Assembly (NCBI GenBank): GCA_028534125.1
Contig: CM052826.1
Location: forward strand, 22,258,001-22,322,000
Direction of reading: 5' to 3'
Source of the DNA: Lama glama
Lineage: Eukaryota
Length of the DNA: 64,000 nt
The position numbers and the translations under genes were made by a program. Positions 21,013 to 53,381 of this stretch are shown here, in pieces. Numbering within the stretch: position 1 is the stretch's first letter; each line of letters starts with the position of its first letter. The notes under the pieces were generated by a model. The model saw only the letters and a program-made list of their open reading frames with translations. It ran no database searches and had not been told where the DNA came from.

Positions 21013-21099
21013 TCAGCTCCCCTGCTTGAGGACGCTGTAAACCTGCTCCAGCACGTGGCACAGGCCCTGGTCCTTGGGCATCCTGCTGGCCAGGGAGAT
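21013..21099 (-). CDS. MPND: MPND exon 13 (stop)
   Basis: [28 protein letters not shown]. Confidence 0.95.
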   Translation of the reverse strand: MSLASRMPKDQGLCHVLEQVYSVLKQGS

Positions 21100-24000
21100 C
21101 TGAAATAGGCAGGCCTGCCTCAGGGCGGCGCAGGCGCTTCTGCCCTGGAGGCCCTGCGCTGCAGCCTGGCAGAGGGGTTCTCGGCTGTATCCCTAAAGCC
21201 GCGCCTTCCTCTTAGGCACATTTCATCTCGAAGGCCCCGGATGTCATTGTTTGGGAGGTAGGGGTTCCTCCACACAATCCAAATCCTCCTTACTGCCCCC
21301 TTGCATGCCCAGGGCCACCCCCACCCCTCCCACCCAGTGCCAGGGTGGGAGGTGACCAGTGGCAGCTTTAAGCCCTGGTCGCTGTCAGGTCTAACAAAAC
21401 AAGCAAACGTGTGAAATTCTGTTTTTCTGCAAAGGGGAGTGGGGAGTATCTTCTGAGAATGACTCTCAAGCAGGAGATAAGGAGACGCACTGAAGAGGCT
21501 GCCAAGCCCTCTTGACATACCCCACTGACCAGCCGTAGGGCCGGTGGGCCAGGGAAGCTCGCTCCCGCACCAGCCGCTCTGCTCAGTTCAGCTCTGCTGG
21601 TGCGTAAGGCTCGGGATCGGATCAGACCGCCTTCTGCTCCCCAGCGTGTGGCCCGGGGAGGGGGGGCCCAGCGCAGCTTCTCCAGCCGGGATGTCCCCGG
21701 GCCACAGGGTCTGTGGGGCTTTTACCTTTTCCTCTGCACTTGGATGGTGACCTCTACTGCCGTCACCGCCCATGTGTGATAAAACACGACTCTGTTCATT
21801 TCTAAAGTATTTTTGCACAGGACCACTTAAGAAGTCACTATTTCTCATACTGCCCATGGATATAGACTCGGGGGTTCCCCAAGATCATCTTTTCAGGGAG
21901 GGGTTTGCATGAGTCTCACCTTCAGCTTGTCGAGGTAGGTGTGCTCCTGGTTCCAGGGCTCCTGGAACCTGACAAGGTCAGGGGCGCCCTTGTAGAACTC
22001 CACCAGCAGCGTCTGCGGGTCGGGGTGGGGGCAGGTAAGAGCCCGGGCTCCCGCCCTGCCCAGGCCCGGCGCCAGGGGGCAGCAGCGGGTGGGACAGGCA
22101 CTGCTCTGCCCCTCACGTGGCCTCTAGGCATTGCCAGGAGGTAAACCGCCAAGCAGCACCACCCCCACCCAGGAGAAATAAGGGAGCTTGGTAGCAGGGC
22201 CCCCGGAGGAGACTGAACCCTGCCAGCAGAAGGCGGCCCACCGAACGTGATTCTTTACACCCACACAGCCCTGACACCACTCCCTGGTTTAACCTCATCC
22301 CGAGAGTAACATCCCTGAAATCACAGGTGTGACCAACTAGCTCAATCTGTTTAAATGCCTGTTTAACAGCAGGAATTAAAAATCTTCACCCAGGTAACGC
22401 TTGAGGTTCACGTGTCCCCTCGTGGAGAATCAGTGGCAGGTGCAGAGAGCCAAGGCGTGAGCATTGCTGGCATGCTCCAGAACAGCGAGGAGGCCAGGAA
22501 GGCGTGGGAGGGGGAGGCGGGAGGGGCTCGGGCAAGGGTCTGGGACCCACCCTTAGAGCCCTTGATTTTCAGCAGTGGAAGAGGAGCCTGCCCTGGGCCC
22601 CGATGTGGTGCATCTACCCACAGGTTCCTGAGTCATACAATCCGGGGTCTGTCCAGCTGGGCACCCTCTGCCCCCATCTGCTCCTCCCGGGGCCCCCACC
22701 CGCTCCGCCCAGGAGTGAGCTCACCATCTCATGAAGGACGTCATTAGTCAGGAAGCTGTCCTGGACGTAGGCCATTTCCACGTCCATGGGGATGCCATAG
22801 TCACTGGGTCTTTGCTGGCAGGGACACGAGCCAGTCAGCGCTGACCACCCCCAGCCCCCACCCCAAGACAGCAGTGGACATTGGGAAGTGCGCTAGGCTA
22901 GGAATCAGAATGGATACTCCAGGCCTGGGTCTGCACTAGGATCAGATTCAGAGCCTTATGGCCCTTCGGGGAACCCGGCAGCACGGCTAGAGAAGCTGGG
23001 TGGCATCCCCCCCACCACACAGGCAGGAGTGGCTGTGGCTCTGGAATTCCTTAACAAAGCTGCTTTTCTGGGGGGAGGGCGGGTAATTGGGTTGGTTGGT
23101 TGGTTGGTTTTAATGGGGATTGAACTCAACCACGGAGCTATACTCTCGCCCGCCTCCCCCAAAGCTTATCTCTGATCCCAATACGGACTTAGGGAATGAA
23201 ACCAAACAAGGCTCAGGAAGGAGACGATCTTGGTAGCAAAAGCAGCATGCTACGGGTGCAGCCCCCACCTTTCCAGCACCCTTCACACCCAGGCCCTCGC
23301 AGGAGCCTCCGTGATTATGTTTGCAGAGAAACTGAGACCCCAGCTCCGTAAATGAGTCCGGAACCAGACTCTAGGCTCTGTGCTGCCCACGAGCCTCCTG
23401 GCCCCGCCCACGCCGCCCGGCCCGGCCTCCCCCAGCAGCCCCGCCTACCTCAGGGGGCGGCATCACCCAGAAGGGCGAGATCTTGGACTCTGGCCCCGGG
23501 TTGCCAGAGTAGTAAGGGGCTGAGGGGAGGAGAAAGAAGGGGCTGAGCCTGGCGGGGCTTGGTGGTCGTCAGGGTCCCACACCCGCCCCTTTCGTGGGAC
23601 TCACAGCAGAGCAGGGCGAGGCAGGGCTGAAAGCCGTTGCTGGAGCCCTGCAGCCGCAGCTGGTAGTCCATCTGCGCGTCGATGTCCTGCAGCGACGGCA
23701 GCGCCGGGCTGTGCGGGTGGCTGTGGTACCAGCCCACCAGGGACAGGCCCCGCAGAAGCAGGCTCTGGTAGATCTAGGGGCAGAGACACGGCTAGGGCCA
23801 GCTCGGGACCGAGGCTCTACCAGCCCTAGGGCACTCACACCACTCCCGCAGCCAGTGTGCCTGGCACCCATCCAGCCCCACATGTGGCCAACATTTAATG
23901 AGCACCTGCTGGGTACCAGGCCTGAGGACACAGCAGTGACGGAGACAGACCCTGCCCACCTTCATGAGTCCAACAAATACATTGGAAAGAAAAAAAAAAA

Positions 24001-27000
24001 AGATGCACCTATCATAAATCAAAGGCAAAAGGTTATTTTGCTCACTGCTGTATCCCCGGCGCAAAGAGCAGTGCCTGGCACACAGTAGGCACTCAGCAGT
24101 TAAATGAAGAGACAGGGCAGGCATTCCTGGGTGCAGAGCGAGTAGAGGCAAGCGAAAAGAAGAGGTGGGAGGAGAAACGTGTGCGCTGAGTAAACAACTA
24201 TTCTCCGGTCTCCGCCTGCCTTCTGCGGGGACACAAGAAGGTGGGTCTAGAGCGCTTAGCACAGTGCCAGGTGCCTAGTAAGCACCATTATGAGAATATT
24301 AAGAACGTCAGCTAATATTTACCGGGCCTTTACCAGGTGCCAGGCAGGTGTGGAAACCGAGGCTCAGAAAACAAGAGGCCCGCACAGGCACAGAGGAAGT
24401 AGGACCACAGGGGTCACAGGTGCGGGGACTGGTGCTCACACACCGCACTCACTCTCATTTGCATCCTTGCTGAGTGGTGACACTGCGCTAGCCGCGGGTA
24501 CGTGGTAGCCAACAGCTGTGTCCCCACCAGCCCTCCGCAGAACGCCCTGTCACCGTGCGCTCCCTCACCTCCTCTTCGATGGTGGCTGCCATATCGGCGT
24601 CCCCCAGCCGACTCCGACAGGGGAAGGCTCTCAGCACCGTGAGCACTGCGCGGAGGCGGGAGAAGGCGTGGACATCGATCCCGGCCCCAAACACCCCCCT
24701 GCCCATGGGGCCCAAATACCCACTCTGACTGTTGATGTCCCAGCGGCCCCCCAGGTACCCCACGACCTGGCTGCGAGTCAGGTGGCTGTGGAAGTCCTGG
24801 GGAGGGGAGGGACATCGGAAGACCCACTCAGGCTTTGCCTGGCCCCAATGCCAACTGGGGGCCAGGGCCCTTGCATTGTGTGGGAGTCAGCCCACCCCCC
24901 TCCTCCTTTGTTCAAACATTGAGTGCTAATGTTTACTGGTAGTGAACAGAGCAGACAAGATCCCTGCCCTTGTGGAGCTGACCTTCCAGGGACACCCTCC
25001 CTGAGGACCCCACCGCCCTGCCCAGGCCTGGGAGCCCCGGCTCAGAAGGGACAAGGTGGGAGCTGGGAACGCACCAGCAGGAACAGCACGTTGCTGGAGA
25101 TAGCCACGTTGAATGGCTGGAACTTGTTGATAGCTGCGAAGGATGTTACTTCCACAAGGGTGTGAGGGTTCCTACAGGAGCCAGGAGGGTCCCACAGCCT
25201 CAGGAACACCCAGGCCCTTCCCTCATTCCCAGACTGGCTCCCCAGCCCCACAAGGCCAGCTATGAGGTCTGAGGTCTTATCTCCACCGTACCCCTGCTCT
25301 TGTGCCCCCCACACACACACCCGCAAGAGCTCACAAGATGGGGATGGGGTCAGGGGGTGGGCATGGGGTGCATCTGACCTGGCAGAGTCCCGACTTCCCA
25401 GCATGCAGTAGCGCACTGGCACACGTATCTTGTTTTCCACCCGTTTCCCTGGGAGCGTGGCCTCTGCGGGATCGGGAGGAGGGTGGGGGACACAGGTAAG
25501 AAAAAAGACAGTGTCAGTGTCTCCCTAGCCAGGAACTGGAAAACGAAGACCAGGCAGCCCAAGAAAGACAAAACTCCAGGGGCAGCCTTAAAAATCAGGC
25601 AGCTGGACTGGGAAATCAGGAGGCAAGTTAACAAACTGGGCAGAAGAGATTTAAAGATCAAATGAAAGACTCAGGAAATGAGGTGATGATCAGGCAGCAG
25701 TCGGAGAAATCAGGCAACAGAGCAAAGAAACCTACAGGGGAGCAAGGAAATCAGGAAGCATGATGAAGAAATTGGGCCCCAGATAAAGAAATTGGGCAGT
25801 GGGACCAAGAAATATAGCATTCAAGCTTAAGAAGTAAGGCAGAATGTGAAATTAGGGCTGCAGGGCCAGGTGTCAGCCAGGTGTCTTGAGGGCTGTAAGG
25901 AAAAGAAAAGCCAGATTTGCCCCCCAGCCCCCTAAGTTCTGTCCCCCTCGCGCCCTGCGTCCTCCGTTTCCCACACATCTCACCCAGGTGGACAGGCTCA
26001 GAGAGGCCCTTTGCCTGTGGTCTCCGACTCTTGTCCTCTGCTGAGACTCCTGTCAGAACCTCCTCCTCCTCTTCCTCCAGCAGCTCCTCCTCCTCCCCTT
26101 CGCTGGCCGGGCTCTGGCGGGGTTGGAGTTTGGGGGACAGTGACCAGACTTTCAGCTGGATGCTCCCGATCGTCCCCTCACGTTCCACCGGAACCTTTGC
26201 TTTGCCTGAGCCTTAGGTCCCTGCCGTTGCCCGAGGTGCCCACCAGAGGGAGCGAGTGAGCAGAGGCGGTCTAGGCTCTGAGGCAGTCTCGCAGGTTGGA
26301 ATCCTGCCTCTGCTATACAAACTGACTTCCGGCTCTAGTCTCATCTGTAACAGGGCACAATGACCTCCAGCCCCACAGGGGTGGCCTAAGGGGTGGCCGA
26401 ATGAGATAGTGTGCAAAGCATTTAATAAATGCCGTTGCTTCATTCATCCAGCAAGCAAGAGCTTTGCGTGGATTACTTTACCAGATTCTCTCAGTAACAT
26501 CTCCTCTTGCTCTCTCCTAAACTGCCCTTGCTGGGATGACCTCTCAGTGTCCAAACCCAACGGCTACATCTCAGTCTCTGTCCCCCACCTCCTCTCGGCA
26601 GCATCTGACCCGACTAGTCCCCCTCCTCCTGGGAACTCCTCAGGGACCCCTGCACTCACCTGGCTTTCCTCCCCACTCTCCTTCATTGGCCCAGGGCTGG
26701 GTCCTGGGGCCTCTTTCCTCCCCAACCCACACCCCTCCAAGGTGGCCTTGTCTCTTGGGGTTCAAACGCCATCTACCCCCAAGACAACTACCCACAGTCC
26801 TGACTGCACCCTTGGGCCTCCCCTGAGCTCCTGACTTGGGGTCCAGCTACCCCTTGACATCTCCAGGCAGGGGTCTCACGGGGGTCTCACACTCAACATG
26901 GCTACCCTGCACCCGACCATCCCCTCAAACCTGCTTTATCCGAATCCCTACATCTCTGATGTGGGCAAACCCATCTACCCAATTGCTCAGAACAAAACAT

Positions 27001-29941
27001 CTAATGCCAACTTCATACCCATCAGCAAGTCCGGTCAGATCCACTTTCAGAATTAACCAGAAGCTACCCACTTCCTCCCCACTCAGTGGCTGATCTGGTT
27101 GACTCCATCATCACCCACCTGGACCGGTGCAGTCACCTGCACCCTGATTCCCTGGCACCTGCTCTCGCCACCCCTCTAAAGTCTGTCCTCCCTATAACAG
27201 CCACCAGAAGCCGCTTGTGAGCACCTGAGTCCAGTCCTGTTCCTCCTCTGCCCACAGTCCTCTAGGGCTCCCACTTCCCTCAGGGTAGAAGCCTAAGTCC
27301 TTCCCAAGGCCCCCAAGGCCCTGCCCAATCTGCCCCGTCCCCTCCCTGTCCTCACTTCCTACCACTCTTCCCCTTGCTCACTCTGTTCCAGCCACACTGG
27401 CCTCCTCACTATGCCTTCAGTATGTCAGACACATGCCAGCCTCAGGGCCTTTACATGTGCTGTTTTCCAGAAATCCTCATGGCTCCCTTTCTCTCCTCCT
27501 TCAATACTCCGATCAAATGTCACCTTCTCAGTGAGGCCTTCCTTGACCACCTTATTCCTTTCACCACTCCCATCCCCTGCCCCTGCTCCCTTCTTCCAAC
27601 AGACTATAAGAGGGTTTTATTTATTTTGTTTGTCTCACTCTTCATGAAAGCAGGGATTTTTTCTCATTTTGCTCACTGCTTTATCATTATCACCTAAAAG
27701 AGGGCCTAGCACCCTACTGGCATTGACTAAATACTTGCTGAATTAATAGCCCTATGGCATGGTGCGAAAGTTGGTTTTATAAGTCGACTTGGCTAGGCTC
27801 TAGTACCCAGTTATTTAATCAAACACTAGTCCAGGTGTTGCTGTGAAGGCATTGGGTAGATGTGGTTCACATTACAATGAGTTGACTTTCAATAAAGTTT
27901 ATCCTTGATAATGTCGGTGAGCCTCATCCAATCAGTTGAAAGGCCTTATGAGCAAAAACTGAGGTTTCCTGGAAAATAAGGAATTCTGCCTTTTAAAGAC
28001 TGCAGCATTAACTCCTGCCTAAGTTTCCAGCCTGCTGCCTAAGTTTCCAGCCTGCCAGTGGTCCTACAGATATCAGGCTTAGGAGCCAGATATAGATCAA
28101 CAGATGGATGGACAGAGAGAGAGAGGGAGCAGGGGAGGGAGAGAGAGGGAGAGGGGGAGGGGGGAGAGGAGGGCAGAGGGGATGGGGGAGGGAGAGATCT
28201 CTGATACACATGGGTACCATTATAATCTCTGTTTTACATATGACTAAGACTAGGAACCCAGAGAGGTTCCTTGGCCAAGTTCACCCAGCTGGTGAACATT
28301 TAAGGAATATCTGTTTCTACCATGGCATTCAAGACCCTCCCAGATCTGATCCCTGCCAACGTCTCCAGCCCCCTCAGCTGTCAAGGCATCTGAACCTCCA
28401 GCTGCATCAGCTAATAATGGTTCCCTAAGCGGCATGTGTTGCTTCAGGCCTACATGGCTTTGCATATGCCATTCCCTCCTCTGGAAAGCTCTTCCCTTCA
28501 TCTTTCTCTGACAAACTCCAGTTCATCCCTCAAGTCCCCAGCTCCAACAACCTCTCTCTGGGCACTCCTTGTCCAACAGTGAGTCAGGGAGGGCTTGCTG
28601 ATGGGGGCTGAAGGACGCACCTCATCGGCGGCAGCTGCAGGCACATGGAGCTGGTTTCGCCGGAGCCAGGCCGCCTTGTACTTGTCCAGTTTCTGGCCCT
28701 TGTACTTGACAGAGGCCCAGCCACAGCCAGACTTCTTGGCTGGGTTCACCAGCTTCTTGCAATGGGTGGCCCAGGCACTGGGTGAGTTGAACACCTGGCC
28801 CGTTTCCTGCCACACGATCCTCCCATCTGGCTGCAGGTCTCCCAAGAACTTTTTCCCCTGCAGTGACAGTGGGTTGGATGAGCCCAGGATCTGGTACCCA
28901 GCAAGACCCCTCCTCCAGGAAGCCCTCCTTGACCCCACGGTGCTCCCTGGGGCTTGGCACCCACTTCCCACTACAGCACCCCTTCCAGGAAGCCTTCCAG
29001 CCTCCCAGTGCCTGTATGTCCGTGATCACAGTCCTGATCAGCCCAGATTGAAATTGTCCAGTTATGGGTATGTCCCTCCTCCCTTCACTGGACTGTGAAC
29101 CCCAAAGGTCTGTCTTGATATCTGCTGTGTCCCTAACAGCCACCATAGCCTGGCACACAGCAGGTGCTCAATTTATAAATTGCTCCCACTCACAAAGAGC
29201 ATGAACAGTAATAGTAATAATACCAAACACCTGTGAAGCACTTACTGTGCAGCAGGCATGCTGCTGAGCACTTACTCAATGAATCCTCATACAACCCAGT
29301 AGGGGAAAAGAAAATCTCATTTTGCAGATGGGGAACCTAGTACAGAGGGAGAACGAAGTCACACAGCCAGGAAGGCAGCAGTGTCCTCTGTGAGCCTCAG
29401 TTTCTCCTTTGTGGAATGGGGTGTTTGATGAACAATGTTCTCCCGCCCAGAAGGGCTCGTGCTAGATCTGGATGGTCCGTGCCTCAGTTTCCCCTCCCCA
29501 CACCGTTGCTCCGCCTGCGGCAATGGAACACCCTGGACTCCAGTTTCCCCTTTTCTGGGCTGGGGGGCGCTCACCAGATAGTAGATTGACAGCACCCCGG
29601 CGCCGGGCTCCAGCAGCGCGTCTTTAAGGAGCACCCGCAGCGTGACCGCGCGCCTGGTGAGCGCGCCCCCAGGCCCGCTGCAACAAGCCGCCCCGGCCCC
29701 GCCGCCGCCACTTCCACCGCCGCCGCGCGCGCCGCCCGCTGCCCCTGGCCGCTCGGGGTCCTCGGCCTCCGCTTCGTCCTCGTCCTCATCGGGCGCCTCC
29801 TCGCCTGCGCCCCCAGCTGGGGACAGCGGCTCTGGAGCTGCGGGCAGCGACAGGCTGCAGCGGGGCCGAGAGGCCTCAGCGGATCCAGCCACCCCGCCCC
29901 GAGCCACGCCGGCCCCCTGCCAGGCTCGCCTTACCTGCCAT
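21013..29941 (-). CDS. MPND: MPN domain-containing protein (RAMA + JAMM/MPN), 13 coding exons, 492 aa
   Basis: complement join(29935-29941,29575-29837,28621-28857,25984-26113,25379-25463,25075-25171,24724-24796,24569-24645,23605-23773,23449-23519,22725-22814,21920-22012,21013-21099) = 1479 nt, open. [12 protein letters not shown]...; JAMM motif [17 protein letters not shown]; ends VLKQGS*. Confidence 0.97.
21920..22012 (-). CDS. MPND: MPND exon 12
   Basis: [31 protein letters not shown]. Confidence 0.95.
22725..22814 (-). CDS. MPND: MPND exon 11 (symmetric, 90 nt)
   Basis: [30 protein letters not shown]. Confidence 0.92.
23070..23160 (-). mobile_element. Internally deleted tRNA-derived SINE
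   Basis: Reverse complement reads ...gagtatagctccgtggttgagttcaatcccc...accaaccaacccaattaccc. Confidence 0.55.
23449..23519 (-). CDS. MPND: MPND exon 10
   Basis: [23 protein letters not shown]. Confidence 0.95.
23605..23773 (-). CDS. MPND: MPND exon 9 (JAMM zinc ligands)
   Basis: [56 protein letters not shown]. Confidence 0.96.
24569..24645 (-). CDS. MPND: MPND exon 8
   Basis: [25 protein letters not shown]. Confidence 0.95.
24724..24796 (-). CDS. MPND: MPND exon 7
   Basis: [24 protein letters not shown]. Confidence 0.95.
25075..25171 (-). CDS. MPND: MPND exon 6
   Basis: [32 protein letters not shown]. Confidence 0.95.
25379..25463 (-). CDS. MPND: MPND exon 5
   Basis: [27 protein letters not shown]. 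Confidence 0.93.
25984..26113 (-). CDS. MPND: MPND exon 4 (acidic linker)
   Basis: [32 protein letters not shown]... Confidence 0.93.
26480..27750. mobile_element. LINE-2 remnants
   Basis: L2-like text 'caaatgtcaccttctcagtgaggccttccttgaccacc' and 'aaatacttgctgaatt'; approximate. Confidence 0.6.
27759..28090 (+). mobile_element. MLT2-type (ERVL) LTR fragment
   Basis: 'gtcgacttggctaggct...cctcatccaatcagttgaaaggcctta...aggaattctgcc'; contains a 20-bp tandem duplication at 28015-28054. Confidence 0.7.
28621..28857 (-). CDS. MPND: MPND exon 3 (RAMA domain)
   Basis: [61 protein letters not shown]... Confidence 0.96.
29575..29837 (-). CDS. MPND: MPND exon 2
   Basis: [30 protein letters not shown]...[24 protein letters not shown]. 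Confidence 0.95.
29935..29941 (-). CDS. MPND: MPND exon 1 coding part (ATG GCA G)
   Basis: gcggccATGGCAG|gtaagg in a CpG island, strong Kozak context. Confidence 0.9.
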
Positions 29942-36800: not shown

Positions 36801-39800
36801 CCCAGCTTTGCCACCTCACTTCCTTCTCTTTCTCCACCTCTTCTCCACAGGATTACAAGAAGTTCTGGGCAGGCCTCCAGGGCCTGACTCTTTATTTCTA
36901 CAATAGTAATCGGGACTCCCAGGTAAGAATGGAAGTGAAGGCTCAAGAGCTGGTCCACCCTTGACCCCAGGGACCAAGCAGAGGGTGTGGGTGGTGTGTT
37001 CAAGTCAGGAGGCCCGAGGGACCACAGGTGTAGTGCTCAGACCCTGGCTTCTGTGCCCCCAGTACGTGGAGAAGCTAGACCTAGGAGTGTTTGTGAAGCT
37101 CAGAGATGAGGCTCCCTGGGGGAGCTCCCAAGACCCTGGCACCCACTTCTGCTTGGTCCTGCGGAACCAGGAGATCAAGTTCAAGGTAGGTCTCTAGGTA
37201 GGGCTGGTGGGAGACCCTCCCTCCCTGTTGCACCTACCATCAACACACACTAGCATGGTGTTGCAGTCTACTACTGGGTTGGTGACACTGGGTAGGTCAC
37301 TGAGCCTCAGTTTTCCCAACTGAAAAATGGGATAATACATGTACAGTGCCCAAAACAAGATCTGATCCAAAAGGATCATCACTGTCATACTCTATCTTTC
37401 AGCTAATTTTATTGAGCACCTACTATGTGCCAGACACCCTTCTAGTTACACAGCAGTGAATAAAACAATTAAAAATCCTTACTGTAAATGTGTAAAATAT
37501 ATGGAGTGTCAGATTGGTGGTAGATGCTAGGGAGACGAGTACTGGGGAAAGGGGATGGGGGGTCAGGATTGCAATGTTAAGAGGTATGATCAGGAAAGCC
37601 GGTATTGAAGGCCTGAAGGAGGTAAGGGAGCCAGCAGTGTAGATATCTCTGAAACAGCTNNNNNNNNNNNNNNNNNNNNNNNNNNNNNNNNNNNNNNNNN
37701 NNNNNNNNNNNNNNNNNNNNNNNNNNNNNNNNNNNNNNNNNNNNNNNNNNNNNNNNNNNNNNNNNNNNNNNNNNNNNNNNNNNNNNNNNNNNNNNNNNNN
37801 NNNNNNNNNNNNNNNNNNNNNNNNNNNNNNNNNGGAGGACCTGGACTGGTACCCTGAGGGAGGCAGGAATCAAGGGAGGGTTTTAAGGATAGGAGATACA
37901 TCATCTGATTTACACATTTATAAAAATGTTGATGTAATAAGATTAAAGAATAATAATACCCTGTATTACTAAGGATTTATATCCAGACGTCATCCTAAAT
38001 GAATCTGTTCTAACTCATTTAATCTTCAAAACAGCCCTTGGAAACAGGGACTCATTTCTCATTCCAGCTTCACAGATGACTAGACAGACGCTCATCAACC
38101 TGGAATCTTTTTCTTTCCCTCCCCAGGTGGAGAGTCTGGAGTCTCGGGAGATGTGGAAAGGCTTCATCATGACGGTGGTGGAGGTAAGAGTGGCTGCTCT
38201 CAGCCCCCTCTCTCCCATTCCCCACTAGGCCTGCTCAGAAATCCTCCTTTGTGTTTCCAACCTTCCCCCAAAAAACCTCTTGAGCATAGCACACTGGTCT
38301 CAAACTGGAGGCCTATGAGCCAGATGTAGCCCATAAATGTCTTTTGTTTTGCCTGCCAACAAAGTGCTATAAATTTAAAAGTTAGCTGCTATCACTTAAA
38401 AACCAGGAGTTTTAGTCAATATTCCTGATTTCTATTTTACTCATTTGTTCCCTGCCTGACCCCTGCAGGCTGTTGAATTTGAGACCCTGCATTCTAGCAT
38501 CTGCCACACTCTCCTCCCCAGCACCCGTCTCTCTGCGCATCCTCTTTAAGCCCTCTTTGCACTTGAGGTGTCAAGAAGCTCTGGAGCCCCAAACCTGAGT
38601 TTCCATCCTAGCTCCATCCACACCCTGGCCTCAGTTTGCCCCTCTGTGACATGGGCACAGCCGCCCGTTCCCTGACGCCCCAATCACCCCTCAGCTCCGT
38701 GTCCCATTCAACCTGACCCTACTTCCCGGACACCTGTACATGATGACCGAAGCCCTGGCCAAAGAGGAGGCACGCCGTGCGCTCGAGATGCCCTCGTAAG
38801 TGGACCAGGATCTCCAGGATGGTCGCGGGCTGGAAAGCTTGGGGCTGAGGGTGGACAGTGAGTGAGGTCTGCAGGCATTGGGTGTTGCGTTGAGTACAAG
38901 GCTGCATCCGGGCAGGGGCGGGGGTTAGGTCTCACTGCTGTGAGCCCTACTGGGTGTCTAGGGGCGGGACATGTTTTCCAGGGACGGGTTTCGGTGCCTG
39001 GGAGGCGGGTCTGGGTCTCTGAGCGTTGGACTCTGTACCTGGAGGACAGCCCTGAGTCTCCCGAGGCACAGCCTGGGCCTGAAGTGCGAGGCAGCGTCTC
39101 CAAGAGCGAGATTGTGGACGAGTGGGCGTGGCTGGGTACCCGGAGACGCGGCGTGTTACGTTCAGGGGCGCGGCTGTATTCTCGAGGCGGGGTTACGAAG
39201 GGAGGGCGTGGCTGTGTCCCTGGGGGCGGGGCCTTTCCTGGTGAGTGACGCGGCCCGCCCCAGGTGCTTCTTGCAGGTGAGCCGGCTGGAGGCTCAACTG
39301 CTCCTGGAGCGCTACCCGGAGTGCGGGAACCTTCTGCTGCGGCCCAGCGGGGACGGCTCTGGTGGCGTGTCGGTCACCACTCGCCAGGCGCTCAACGGGT
39401 GCGCATGCGTGGCTCCGGAGCCGGGGTTGGGGGGCCGTGGGACGCGGGGGCGAGCTGAGAGTTAGGGGCGGGGCCAAGTCAAAGGTGGAGTCAGGGCCAA
39501 GGGGCGGAGCCAGGACGGGGGCGAGGCCTCCCCGGGGTGAACTCCTTTGGGGCATGGTCCTGGGGCCGGGTGGTGGGGCGCAGGGCCAGGACCAGGGGCA
39601 GGGTCTTTCGTGCAGGTGGAGTCAGTCGAGAGCCTGATCCCCCGCAGAGAGCCACGCCAGGACGGGGCGTGGTCAGTGTGGTGGGGAGCAGGAGGTGGGG
39701 TTAGGCCCTCCGTGGGTGCGGGGCCACGGCGAGGGGCGGGCCCTTCCCTGTCCTCAGCCAGGCCACTGCCCTCGCAGGACGCCGGTAGTCCGGCACTACA

Positions 39801-42514: not shown

Positions 42515-53381
<10,867 letters not shown>

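What the first reader, a model, noticed from the sequence alone, without database searches (positions are those of the whole stretch)
24767..24769. MPND has Gln in place of the JAMM catalytic Glu: candidate pseudo-deubiquitinase
Seen: exon 7 reads CAC CTG ACT CGC AGC CAG GTC GTG GGG TAC = [13 protein letters not shown] (Q283 in this model). The zinc-binding motif [14 protein letters not shown], the RAMA domain and all 13 exons are intact. Established: MPN+/JAMM isopeptidases use the Glu of this strand to position the zinc-bound water (EVMG in Rpn11, CSN5 and BRCC36; ETCG in AMSH; EVIG in MYSM1), and mutating it inactivates them. I recall human MPND as RSEVVG. Inference: a single G>C change (base 24769) could leave a chromatin-binding protein that binds ubiquitinated substrate but cannot cleave it. 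It could equally be a private allele or a consensus error in this gapped assembly.
Basis: partly seen in the sequence, partly recalled or inferred. Interest (0 to 1): 0.8.

Follow-up and report, generated by a model that had tools for sequence, protein, structure and literature searches.

The report
Order-wide Glu-to-Gln swap in MPND
The histone deubiquitinase gene MPND in this camelid carries glutamine where related zinc isopeptidases have their catalytic glutamate, and all 41 named even-toed ungulate and whale species retrieved share the change, so MPND may be a naturally inactivated but still conserved enzyme across that order.

Summary
On the minus strand, 24769..24767 reads CAG (Gln) inside a cleanly spliced 73-nt exon 7 (24796..24724) that encodes [24 protein letters not shown].

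It is not a private allele or an assembly error. Every cetartiodactyl MPND protein retrieved has RSQVVG. That covers 41 named species: camels, pigs, a peccary, 16 ruminants, hippopotamus and 19 cetaceans.

More than 80 other species have RSEVVG: bats, carnivores, horses, pangolin, shrew, mole, primates, rodents, xenarthrans, afrotherians, a wombat and birds. All motif-bearing distant family representatives also have Glu.

A family profile aligns this Glu with BRCC36 E33, the catalytic glutamate of that enzyme. The zinc and serine motif [14 protein letters not shown] is intact.

From the MPN domain to the C-terminus, E/Q is the only column that separates the order from other mammals. Protein divergence is not raised (0.099 against 0.094).

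Best reading: one ancient E-to-Q change on the cetartiodactyl stem made MPND catalytically dead or strongly weakened, and the protein is kept for a non-catalytic chromatin role. Loss of activity is inferred, not shown.

No paper in the library mentions this.

The parts
24767..24769 (-). CAG codon (Gln) at the position of the JAMM catalytic Glu
   Evidence: It aligns with BRCC36 E33 through the family profile.
24724..24796 (-). MPND coding exon 7 (73 nt), [24 protein letters not shown] plus one base; the strand that carries the Glu/Gln
   Evidence: ag|GAC ... CAGA|gt. Identical to camel, pig, ruminant and cetacean MPND.
24646..24723 (-). Intron 7: 78 nt, in frame and without a stop. It is retained in many annotated isoforms as a 26-residue insert.
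24569..24645 (-). MPND coding exon 8 (77 nt), (M)[25 protein letters not shown]
23605..23773 (-). MPND coding exon 9, carrying the zinc-binding JAMM motif [14 protein letters not shown] (23725..23684). It is 100% identical to Camelus.
29575..29837 (-). Coding exon 2: acidic and Gly-rich N-terminus and the start of the RAMA domain
   Evidence: (PF18755 positions 10-41).
29935..29941 (-). Coding exon 1: ATGGCAG, start codon in the context GCCATGG, followed by gtaagg
28621..28857 (-). Coding exon 3: main part of the RAMA domain. An in-frame extension to about 28519 is used in some camel isoforms.
   Evidence: PF18755, E = 3e-25, profile positions 43-106; identical to Camelus over the RAMA part.
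21016..26119 (-). Span holding the remaining coding exons. Approximate limits from tblastn: exon 4 25988-26113, exon 5 25363-25464, exon 6 25075-25171, exon 10 23449-23521, exon 11 22722-22814, exon 12 21917-22012, exon 13 21016-21099 with a TGA stop after 21016.
   Evidence: No stop or frameshift appears in any exon aligned to Camelus MPND.

Best explanation
The window holds an intact MPND gene (RAMA DNA/nucleosome-binding domain plus MPN/JAMM domain) of a camelid that is close to Camelus but not identical to it. In JAMM enzymes a Glu holds and deprotonates the zinc-bound water. Here that position is Gln. The change is a single substitution, most simply GAG to CAG, that arose once on the stem lineage of Cetartiodactyla. 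It has stayed fixed in camelids, pigs and peccaries, ruminants, hippopotamus and whales. Gln can hydrogen-bond the water but cannot accept its proton. Cetartiodactyl MPND is therefore predicted to have lost all or most of its isopeptidase activity towards H2AK119ub and H2BK120ub. It keeps the zinc site, the MPN fold and the RAMA domain, all under continued purifying selection. The protein is then most likely retained for a non-catalytic role: binding DNA and nucleosomes, and possibly ubiquitinated histones, much like an engineered Glu-mutant 'substrate trap'. Shown here: the codon, its position in the catalytic column, its order-wide distribution, the intact rest of the motif, and the unchanged rate of protein evolution. 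Inferred: loss of activity and the nature of the retained function.
For: The codon and exon are as described. RSQVVG is found in all cetartiodactyl entries that contain the exon: 6, 21 (three of them already counted) and 66 of 67 cluster members. The one exception in that set is a lemur sequence, which has E. Names cover Tylopoda, Suina, Ruminantia, Hippopotamidae and Cetacea. RSEVVG or a close variant with E occurs in all non-cetartiodactyl entries and in every motif-bearing distant representative. The column is invariant (E266) in an alignment of 20 distant relatives. A profile of that alignment aligns this E with the E of 'EEVMGL' in BRCC36 (5cw6, E = 3e-11). That residue is E33, described as the catalytic glutamate in PMC7692841. 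The equivalent AMSH-LP mutant E292A is used as an enzymatically dead variant (PMC11984952). Human MPND is reported to be an active H2AK119ub/H2BK120ub deubiquitinase, and the zinc-ligand mutant D362N abolishes the activity (PMC13434294). [13 protein letters not shown] is kept in all cetartiodactyls. E/Q is the only diagnostic column from the MPN domain to the C-terminus. Divergence from outgroups is 0.099 against 0.094 for other Laurasiatheria and 0.103 for Euarchontoglires. In the gene tree the Q group needs one change, with 0 of 500 shuffles as low. RNA runs hold about a third of the sampled words of 23400-25400, close to the exonic share, so the gene is probably transcribed.
Against: No enzyme assay exists for any cetartiodactyl MPND. 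The role of this Glu has not been tested in MPND itself; the published mutants are D362N and a JAMM-domain deletion. From memory, Glu-to-Gln mutants of some zinc proteases keep 0.1-1% activity (matrilysin E198Q), so a slow enzyme is possible. Keeping all zinc ligands and the Ser for tens of millions of years fits residual catalysis as well as it fits a structural or binding role. dN/dS could not be computed because coding DNA of other species was not available. Raw reads at 24769 could not be inspected. The gene tree supports cetartiodactyl monophyly only moderately (75/75).
Confidence: 0.65

Rival explanations
1. The substitution is real and order-wide, but MPND stays a working deubiquitinase in Cetartiodactyla. 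Either Gln suffices to orient the zinc-bound water for a slow chromatin enzyme, or another acidic residue or a partner protein supplies the general base.
For: All zinc ligands and the JAMM Ser are strictly kept in 41 named species, which is what continued catalysis would predict. Protein evolution is not accelerated. From memory, some zinc proteases keep measurable activity after Glu-to-Gln.
Against: No compensating order-specific substitution exists anywhere from the MPN domain to the C-terminus. The Glu is invariant in all other family members sampled. Mutants of the equivalent Glu are standard dead controls in AMSH-LP, and BRCC36 E33 is described as the catalytic glutamate.
Confidence: 0.22
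2. MPND's conserved function is non-catalytic in all mammals, and the Glu was dispensable. On this reading E-to-Q is a neutral change that drifted to fixation, with no functional shift specific to the order.
For: Isoforms that skip exons 7 and 8 in frame (150 nt), and so lack the Glu strand altogether, are annotated in at least 15 entries from whales, cattle, bats, carnivores, rodents, primates and a bird or reptile. Before 2026 the enzymatic activity of MPND lacked direct support (introduction of PMC13434294).
Against: The Glu is invariant in more than 80 non-cetartiodactyl species and in distant representatives 32-54% identical to the first one. That argues for strong selection on it elsewhere. 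Human MPND activity depends on the JAMM motif. After the change the Gln itself never varied in 41 named species.
Confidence: 0.1
3. The Gln is a private allele, a sequencing error or a consensus error of this gapped assembly.
For: None found. Raw reads could not be inspected.
Against: The same residue occurs in independently sequenced genomes of 41 named species in all major cetartiodactyl lineages. Fourteen DNA runs from three coded organisms and six studies hold 96-99% of the sampled words of the surrounding 2 kb.
Confidence: 0.01

Closest known systems
Human and mouse MPND (MPN domain-containing protein; RAMA + JAMM histone H2A/H2B deubiquitinase)
   Same: It is the orthologous gene with the same 13-exon layout. 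The RAMA domain (PF18755) and MPN domain are present, the zinc motif [14 protein letters not shown] is identical, and the flanking residues DFHSHLTRS[15 protein letters not shown] are identical.
   Different: Primates and rodents have Glu at x; this window and all Cetartiodactyla have Gln. Human MPND is reported active on H2AK119ub and H2BK120ub (PMC13434294). Activity of the Gln form is unknown.
Engineered catalytic-Glu mutants of JAMM enzymes (AMSH-LP/STAMBPL1 E292A; BRCC36 E33)
   Same: The same structural position is altered while the zinc ligands stay intact. From memory, such mutants are catalytically dead yet still bind ubiquitin, and AMSH-LP E292A was crystallised with K63 di-ubiquitin.
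   Different: Those are laboratory Ala mutants. Here the change is natural, to the isosteric amide Gln, and fixed in a whole mammalian order.
MPN-minus pseudo-deubiquitinases (RPN8/PSMD7, CSN6, ABRAXAS, ABRO1, eIF3f/h, PRPF8)
   Same: They have an MPN fold without isopeptidase activity and serve as scaffolds or binding modules (PMC7692841; PMC4822132).
   Different: MPN-minus proteins lack the zinc-coordinating JAMM motif altogether and are ancient paralogues. Cetartiodactyl MPND keeps every zinc ligand and the Ser, lacks only the Glu, and is the orthologue of an enzyme that has the Glu in other mammals.
FAM105A/OTULINL: lineage-specific loss of catalytic residues in a DUB-family protein
   Same: It is a precedent for a deubiquitinase-family member that keeps its catalytic residues in some vertebrate lineages but not in others (PMC5381560).
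   Different: It belongs to a different fold (OTU) and is a duplicated gene, and the loss is in the human lineage. MPND is single-copy, and the loss is in Cetartiodactyla.

Membership tests
MPND orthologue | RAMA domain N-terminal to an MPN domain in one gene | tested here: met
   Pfam RAMA is found in the exons at 29575-29841 and 28621-28857. The MPN exons align to MPND proteins that carry PF01398 and PF14464.
MPND orthologue | Highest similarity to annotated MPND of close relatives over all exons, with an intact reading frame | tested here: met
   About 10 differences from Camelus MPND over roughly 500 aligned residues. There is no stop or frameshift in any exon, and the ATG and TGA are present.
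Active JAMM/MPN+ metalloisopeptidase | Zinc ligands His-x-His-x(10)-Asp | tested here: met
   [14 protein letters not shown] lies at 23725..23684.
Active JAMM/MPN+ metalloisopeptidase | Conserved Ser of the JAMM motif (S-x-x-D) | tested here: met
   PSLQD is present. The Ser is invariant (S333) in the family alignment.
Active JAMM/MPN+ metalloisopeptidase | Catalytic Glu about 55-65 residues upstream of the His-x-His, in the E-[VT]-x-G strand | tested here: not met
   The window has Gln (CAG, 24769..24767), with 56 residues between it and the first His of the motif. The column aligns with BRCC36 E33.
Active JAMM/MPN+ metalloisopeptidase | Measured isopeptidase activity | not testable with these tools
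   This needs recombinant protein and ubiquitinated substrates.
MPN-minus pseudo-deubiquitinase | Absence of the zinc-coordinating JAMM motif | tested here: not met
   The motif is fully present and conserved in all cetartiodactyls. This is therefore not a classical MPN-minus protein.

The most novel reading that the evidence does not exclude
Cetartiodactyl MPND is a natural 'substrate-trap' JAMM protein. A single E-to-Q change about 60 million years ago would have turned an eraser of H2AK119ub/H2BK120ub into a zinc-containing reader or protector of these marks. Selection would then have maintained it, with Gln and the zinc site invariant in 41 named species. That would imply an order-specific rewiring of Polycomb-linked histone ubiquitin control in cattle, pigs, sheep, camels and whales.
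Probability: 0.25. Interest if true: 0.8.

Novelty: new variant of a known kind. Interest (0 to 1): 0.66.

Why it matters
MPND is a poorly understood chromatin deubiquitinase. It was recently reported to be an active eraser of H2AK119ub and H2BK120ub and a tumour suppressor in human lung cancer.

A whole mammalian order, including the main livestock species, carries a substitution at the position whose Glu mutants serve as dead controls in related enzymes (AMSH-LP E292A). Yet the protein stays otherwise conserved. That gives a natural experiment on whether MPND's essential function is catalytic.

It yields direct tests: human E-to-Q against bovine or camelid Q-to-E. It also warns against carrying MPND enzymology from human or mouse over to cattle, pig or whale.

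Finally, it adds a rare kind of pseudoenzyme, in which only the general base is lost and the metal site is retained. I found no paper in the searchable library that mentions it.

Tried and rejected
Later homology searches used database proteins, restricted by 'region' to parts outside that stretch. Local scripts did align database proteins to the window file, and one search printed the translation of exon 9.

dN/dS was therefore not computed, and I used protein-level relative rates instead.

3. Pfam and PDB sequence searches with the short exon 7 to exon 8 read-through found nothing. Single exons other than the RAMA exons are too short for Pfam.

4. The representative-library search with exon 9 returned mostly fragments and mis-called pieces that lack exon 7. 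It still supplied the entry protein P0006 and the distant relatives.

5. A single-sequence PDB search with P0040 aligned only the HxH region. A profile search was needed to reach the Glu strand.

All window queries were single exons or stop-free references.

7. No structure prediction was run.

8. The human entry P0248 appeared in a hit list. It lacks exon 7, and I left it out of the alignment and tree sets. No human contig was fetched or compared.

9. The idea that Gln is the usual mammalian residue was rejected.

10. A compensating co-substitution in the MPN domain was looked for and not found.
Full report
**What is in the sequence**

The finding lies on the minus strand. The + strand reads ctg at 24767-24769, so the coding strand reads CAG (Gln), with its first base at 24769. 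The codon sits in a 73-nt exon, 24796..24724, bounded by ag and gt. The exon encodes [24 protein letters not shown].

Intron 7 (24723..24646) is 78 nt, in frame and free of stops. It is followed by exon 8 (24645..24569) and then by exon 9 (23773..23605), which carries [14 protein letters not shown].

tblastn with orthologous proteins maps the whole gene to about 21016-29941 on the minus strand, in 13 coding exons. The ATG lies at 29941..29939 in a 7-nt first coding exon, and a TGA follows 21016. The splice sites I inspected are canonical, and no exon has a stop or a frameshift.

Pfam finds the RAMA domain in exons 2 and 3.

**Which genome**

The window's exons differ from Camelus ferus and C. 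dromedarius MPND at about ten of roughly 500 aligned residues. Examples are NVLFLL against NVLLLL in exon 6 and DADM against DADT in exon 8. The translation of retained intron 7 differs at two of 26 positions.

Camelus is the closest relative among all proteins retrieved. The window is therefore from a camelid other than Camelus, most simply a New World camelid. That last step is an inference.

**Is the Gln real or an artefact?**

The look-up of sequencing runs shows that 14 DNA runs of three coded organisms, from six studies, hold 96-99% of the sampled words of 23400-25400. Three RNA runs hold about a third of the words, near the exonic share of that stretch. This says nothing specific about base 24769.

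The decisive evidence came from other genomes. A representative-library search with exon 9 gave an entry protein, P0006. Together they returned about 240 MPND proteins with source names.

Every cetartiodactyl entry that contains exon 7 reads RSQVVG:
- Tylopoda: Camelus ferus and C. dromedarius.
- Suina: Sus scrofa, Phacochoerus africanus, Catagonus wagneri.
- Ruminantia: Bos taurus, B. indicus and B. mutus, two Bubalus, Ovis, Capra, Oryx, Capricornis, Moschus, two Cervus, Muntiacus, Odocoileus, Dama, Rangifer.
- Hippopotamidae: Hippopotamus amphibius.
- Cetacea: 19 species, from right whale to porpoise.

Every other entry with the exon has Glu. That is more than 80 species of bats, carnivores, equids, a pangolin, shrew, mole, primates (including Pan paniscus), rodents, colugo, xenarthrans, afrotherians, a wombat and birds. 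A lemur sequence that falls in the same 90% cluster as deer MPND also has Glu (P0359).

A private allele or a consensus error is excluded. So is the idea that Gln is the usual mammalian residue.

**Is this the catalytic Glu?**

Among the distant family representatives, every one in which the strand could be recognised reads H-x-H-L-T-x-x-E-V-[VC]-G-Y-L. In an alignment of 20 such proteins, 32-54% identical to the first, the Glu is one of only 16 invariant columns. The others include the two His, the Ser and the Asp of the JAMM motif.

A profile of that alignment, searched against PDB sequences, aligns 'EVvGYLgG' with 'EEVMGLCIG' of zebrafish BRCC36 (5cw6, E = 3e-11). Counting the human BRCC36 sequence from memory, that E is E33. 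The BRCC36 literature calls E33 the catalytic glutamate, which must move towards the zinc for activity (PMC7692841).

In the window, 56 residues separate the Gln from the first His of the motif. From memory, AMSH-LP has E292 and H347, and CSN5 has E76 and H138, which is similar spacing. The matching AMSH-LP mutant E292A is used as the enzymatically dead control (PMC11984952).

No structure of the MPND MPN domain exists in the PDB copy; only the RAMA domain is there (7ydt).

**What happened in evolution**

I aligned 25 cetartiodactyl and 30 other MPND proteins from the start of the MPN region to the C-terminus. The E/Q column is the only well-occupied column that separates the two groups, and there is not even a near-diagnostic second column. 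So there is no candidate compensating substitution in the domain.

The N-terminal half has six order-typical changes. They lie in the Gly/Ala-rich N-terminal stretch, at the H-to-N site in WLRRNQL just after the RAMA domain, and in the acidic and linker region.

An ML tree places all Q-bearing sequences on one side of a branch. One change is needed, support is 75/75, and 0 of 500 label shuffles do as well. With Gln in all four major cetartiodactyl lineages and Glu in Perissodactyla, Carnivora, Pholidota and Chiroptera, the parsimonious reading is one change on the cetartiodactyl stem.

Protein divergence from Atlantogenata outgroups is 0.099 for Cetartiodactyla, 0.094 for other Laurasiatheria and 0.103 for Euarchontoglires. 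The zinc ligands and the Ser are unchanged in every cetartiodactyl. The gene is therefore not decaying, and the Gln itself has never changed again.

**How it most likely works**

Established knowledge of JAMM enzymes: zinc is held by two His and one Asp, and the Glu hydrogen-bonds the zinc-bound water. The Glu acts as general base and then passes the proton to the leaving lysine amine.

Gln is isosteric but cannot take up the proton. I therefore expect cetartiodactyl MPND to be catalytically dead or slower by orders of magnitude, while still folding, binding zinc and presenting a ubiquitin-tail-binding groove.

Human MPND is reported to cleave H2AK119ub and H2BK120ub in vitro. The activity is lost in the D362N mutant and in a JAMM-domain deletion (PMC13434294). 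Its RAMA and MPN domains bind DNA, histones and nucleosomes (PMC9963953; PMC6591016).

The most likely picture is that cetartiodactyl MPND is kept for chromatin binding or scaffolding. It may act as a reader or protector of ubiquitinated histones rather than as an eraser.

Isoforms that skip exons 7 and 8 in frame, and so lack the strand, are annotated in many mammals. That suggests non-catalytic MPND forms are part of the normal repertoire.

I put about 0.65 on loss or strong reduction of activity with a retained non-catalytic role. I put about 0.22 on retained useful catalysis. From memory, some zinc proteases keep 0.1-1% activity after Glu-to-Gln, and the strict retention of the zinc site fits this as well. 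About 0.1 goes to a neutral change in a protein whose Glu never mattered. That reading is hard to square with the invariance of the Glu everywhere else.

**Comparison with what is known**

This is the MPND orthologue. It fails one defining feature of active MPN+ enzymes, the Glu. It also fails the defining feature of classical MPN-minus pseudo-deubiquitinases, because its zinc motif is present.

It is therefore a distinct variant: an orthologue of an active enzyme with only the general base replaced, in a single order. The nearest precedents are the laboratory Glu mutants of AMSH-LP and BRCC36. As an evolutionary pattern, the nearest is FAM105A/OTULINL, which keeps its catalytic residues in some vertebrates but not in humans (PMC5381560).

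Full-text searches found no mention of the substitution. The terms were MPND with JAMM, pseudo, artiodactyl (anywhere in a word) and cattle. The library omits most subscription-journal papers, so this is absence in that library only.

**Limits**

- No reads were laid.
- No coding DNA of other species was obtained, so there is no dN/dS.
- No structure model was made.
- The scan's notebook held nothing on this locus. It lists an untested first-stage note on another piece of the same genome, reporting AMZ1 with its catalytic Glu replaced by Gly (s1-861243). I did not examine that note, and it carries no weight here.

**Verdict**

The artefact explanation is refuted. The finding grows from one codon in one assembly to an order-wide fixed replacement of a catalytic residue in a conserved chromatin enzyme. 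Loss of activity is a strong inference from family knowledge and awaits a simple assay.

Noticed in passing
window 24646-24723 (minus strand): Intron 7 is only 78 nt, in frame and stop-free. Thirty annotated proteins retain it as a 26-residue insert straight after the Gln strand. Its translation is nearly the same in camels ([26 protein letters not shown]), in the window (R and R in place of K and H) and in whales ([26 protein letters not shown]). That is unusually conserved for an intron. Rodent versions are 25 residues long and unrelated in sequence. It may be a real alternative coding segment in Cetartiodactyla.
   Followed up: partly
window 24569-24796 (exons 7 and 8, minus strand): Exons 7 and 8 together are 150 nt. 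At least 15 annotated isoforms skip both in frame, giving the junction NVLFLL|IYQ. They come from porpoise, narwhal, blue whale, cattle, horseshoe bat, tiger, bear, dingo, beaver, mole-rat, marmoset, rat, human and a bird or reptile. These isoforms lack the catalytic-Glu strand but keep the zinc motif.
   Followed up: partly
window 28519-28620 (minus strand): Directly after the RAMA exon, past a gtgagg donor, the frame stays open ([23 protein letters not shown]...). The same extension is included in several annotated Camelus isoforms. This points to an alternative 5' splice site or a retained segment.
   Followed up: no
window 23711-23713 (codon after HSHP, minus strand): The residue after HSHP is the most variable position of the JAMM motif within the order. 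It is His in camelids, pigs, cattle and most deer, Tyr in all cetaceans, Asn in hippopotamus and buffalo, and Gln in sheep, goat and serow. Most other mammals have His. Its significance is unknown.
   Followed up: no
window 37660-37833, 45070-45281, 48361-48491: Three runs of N (174, 212 and 131 bases), all outside the MPND gene.
   Followed up: no
They lie inside exon 9, just after the zinc-binding motif.
   Followed up: no
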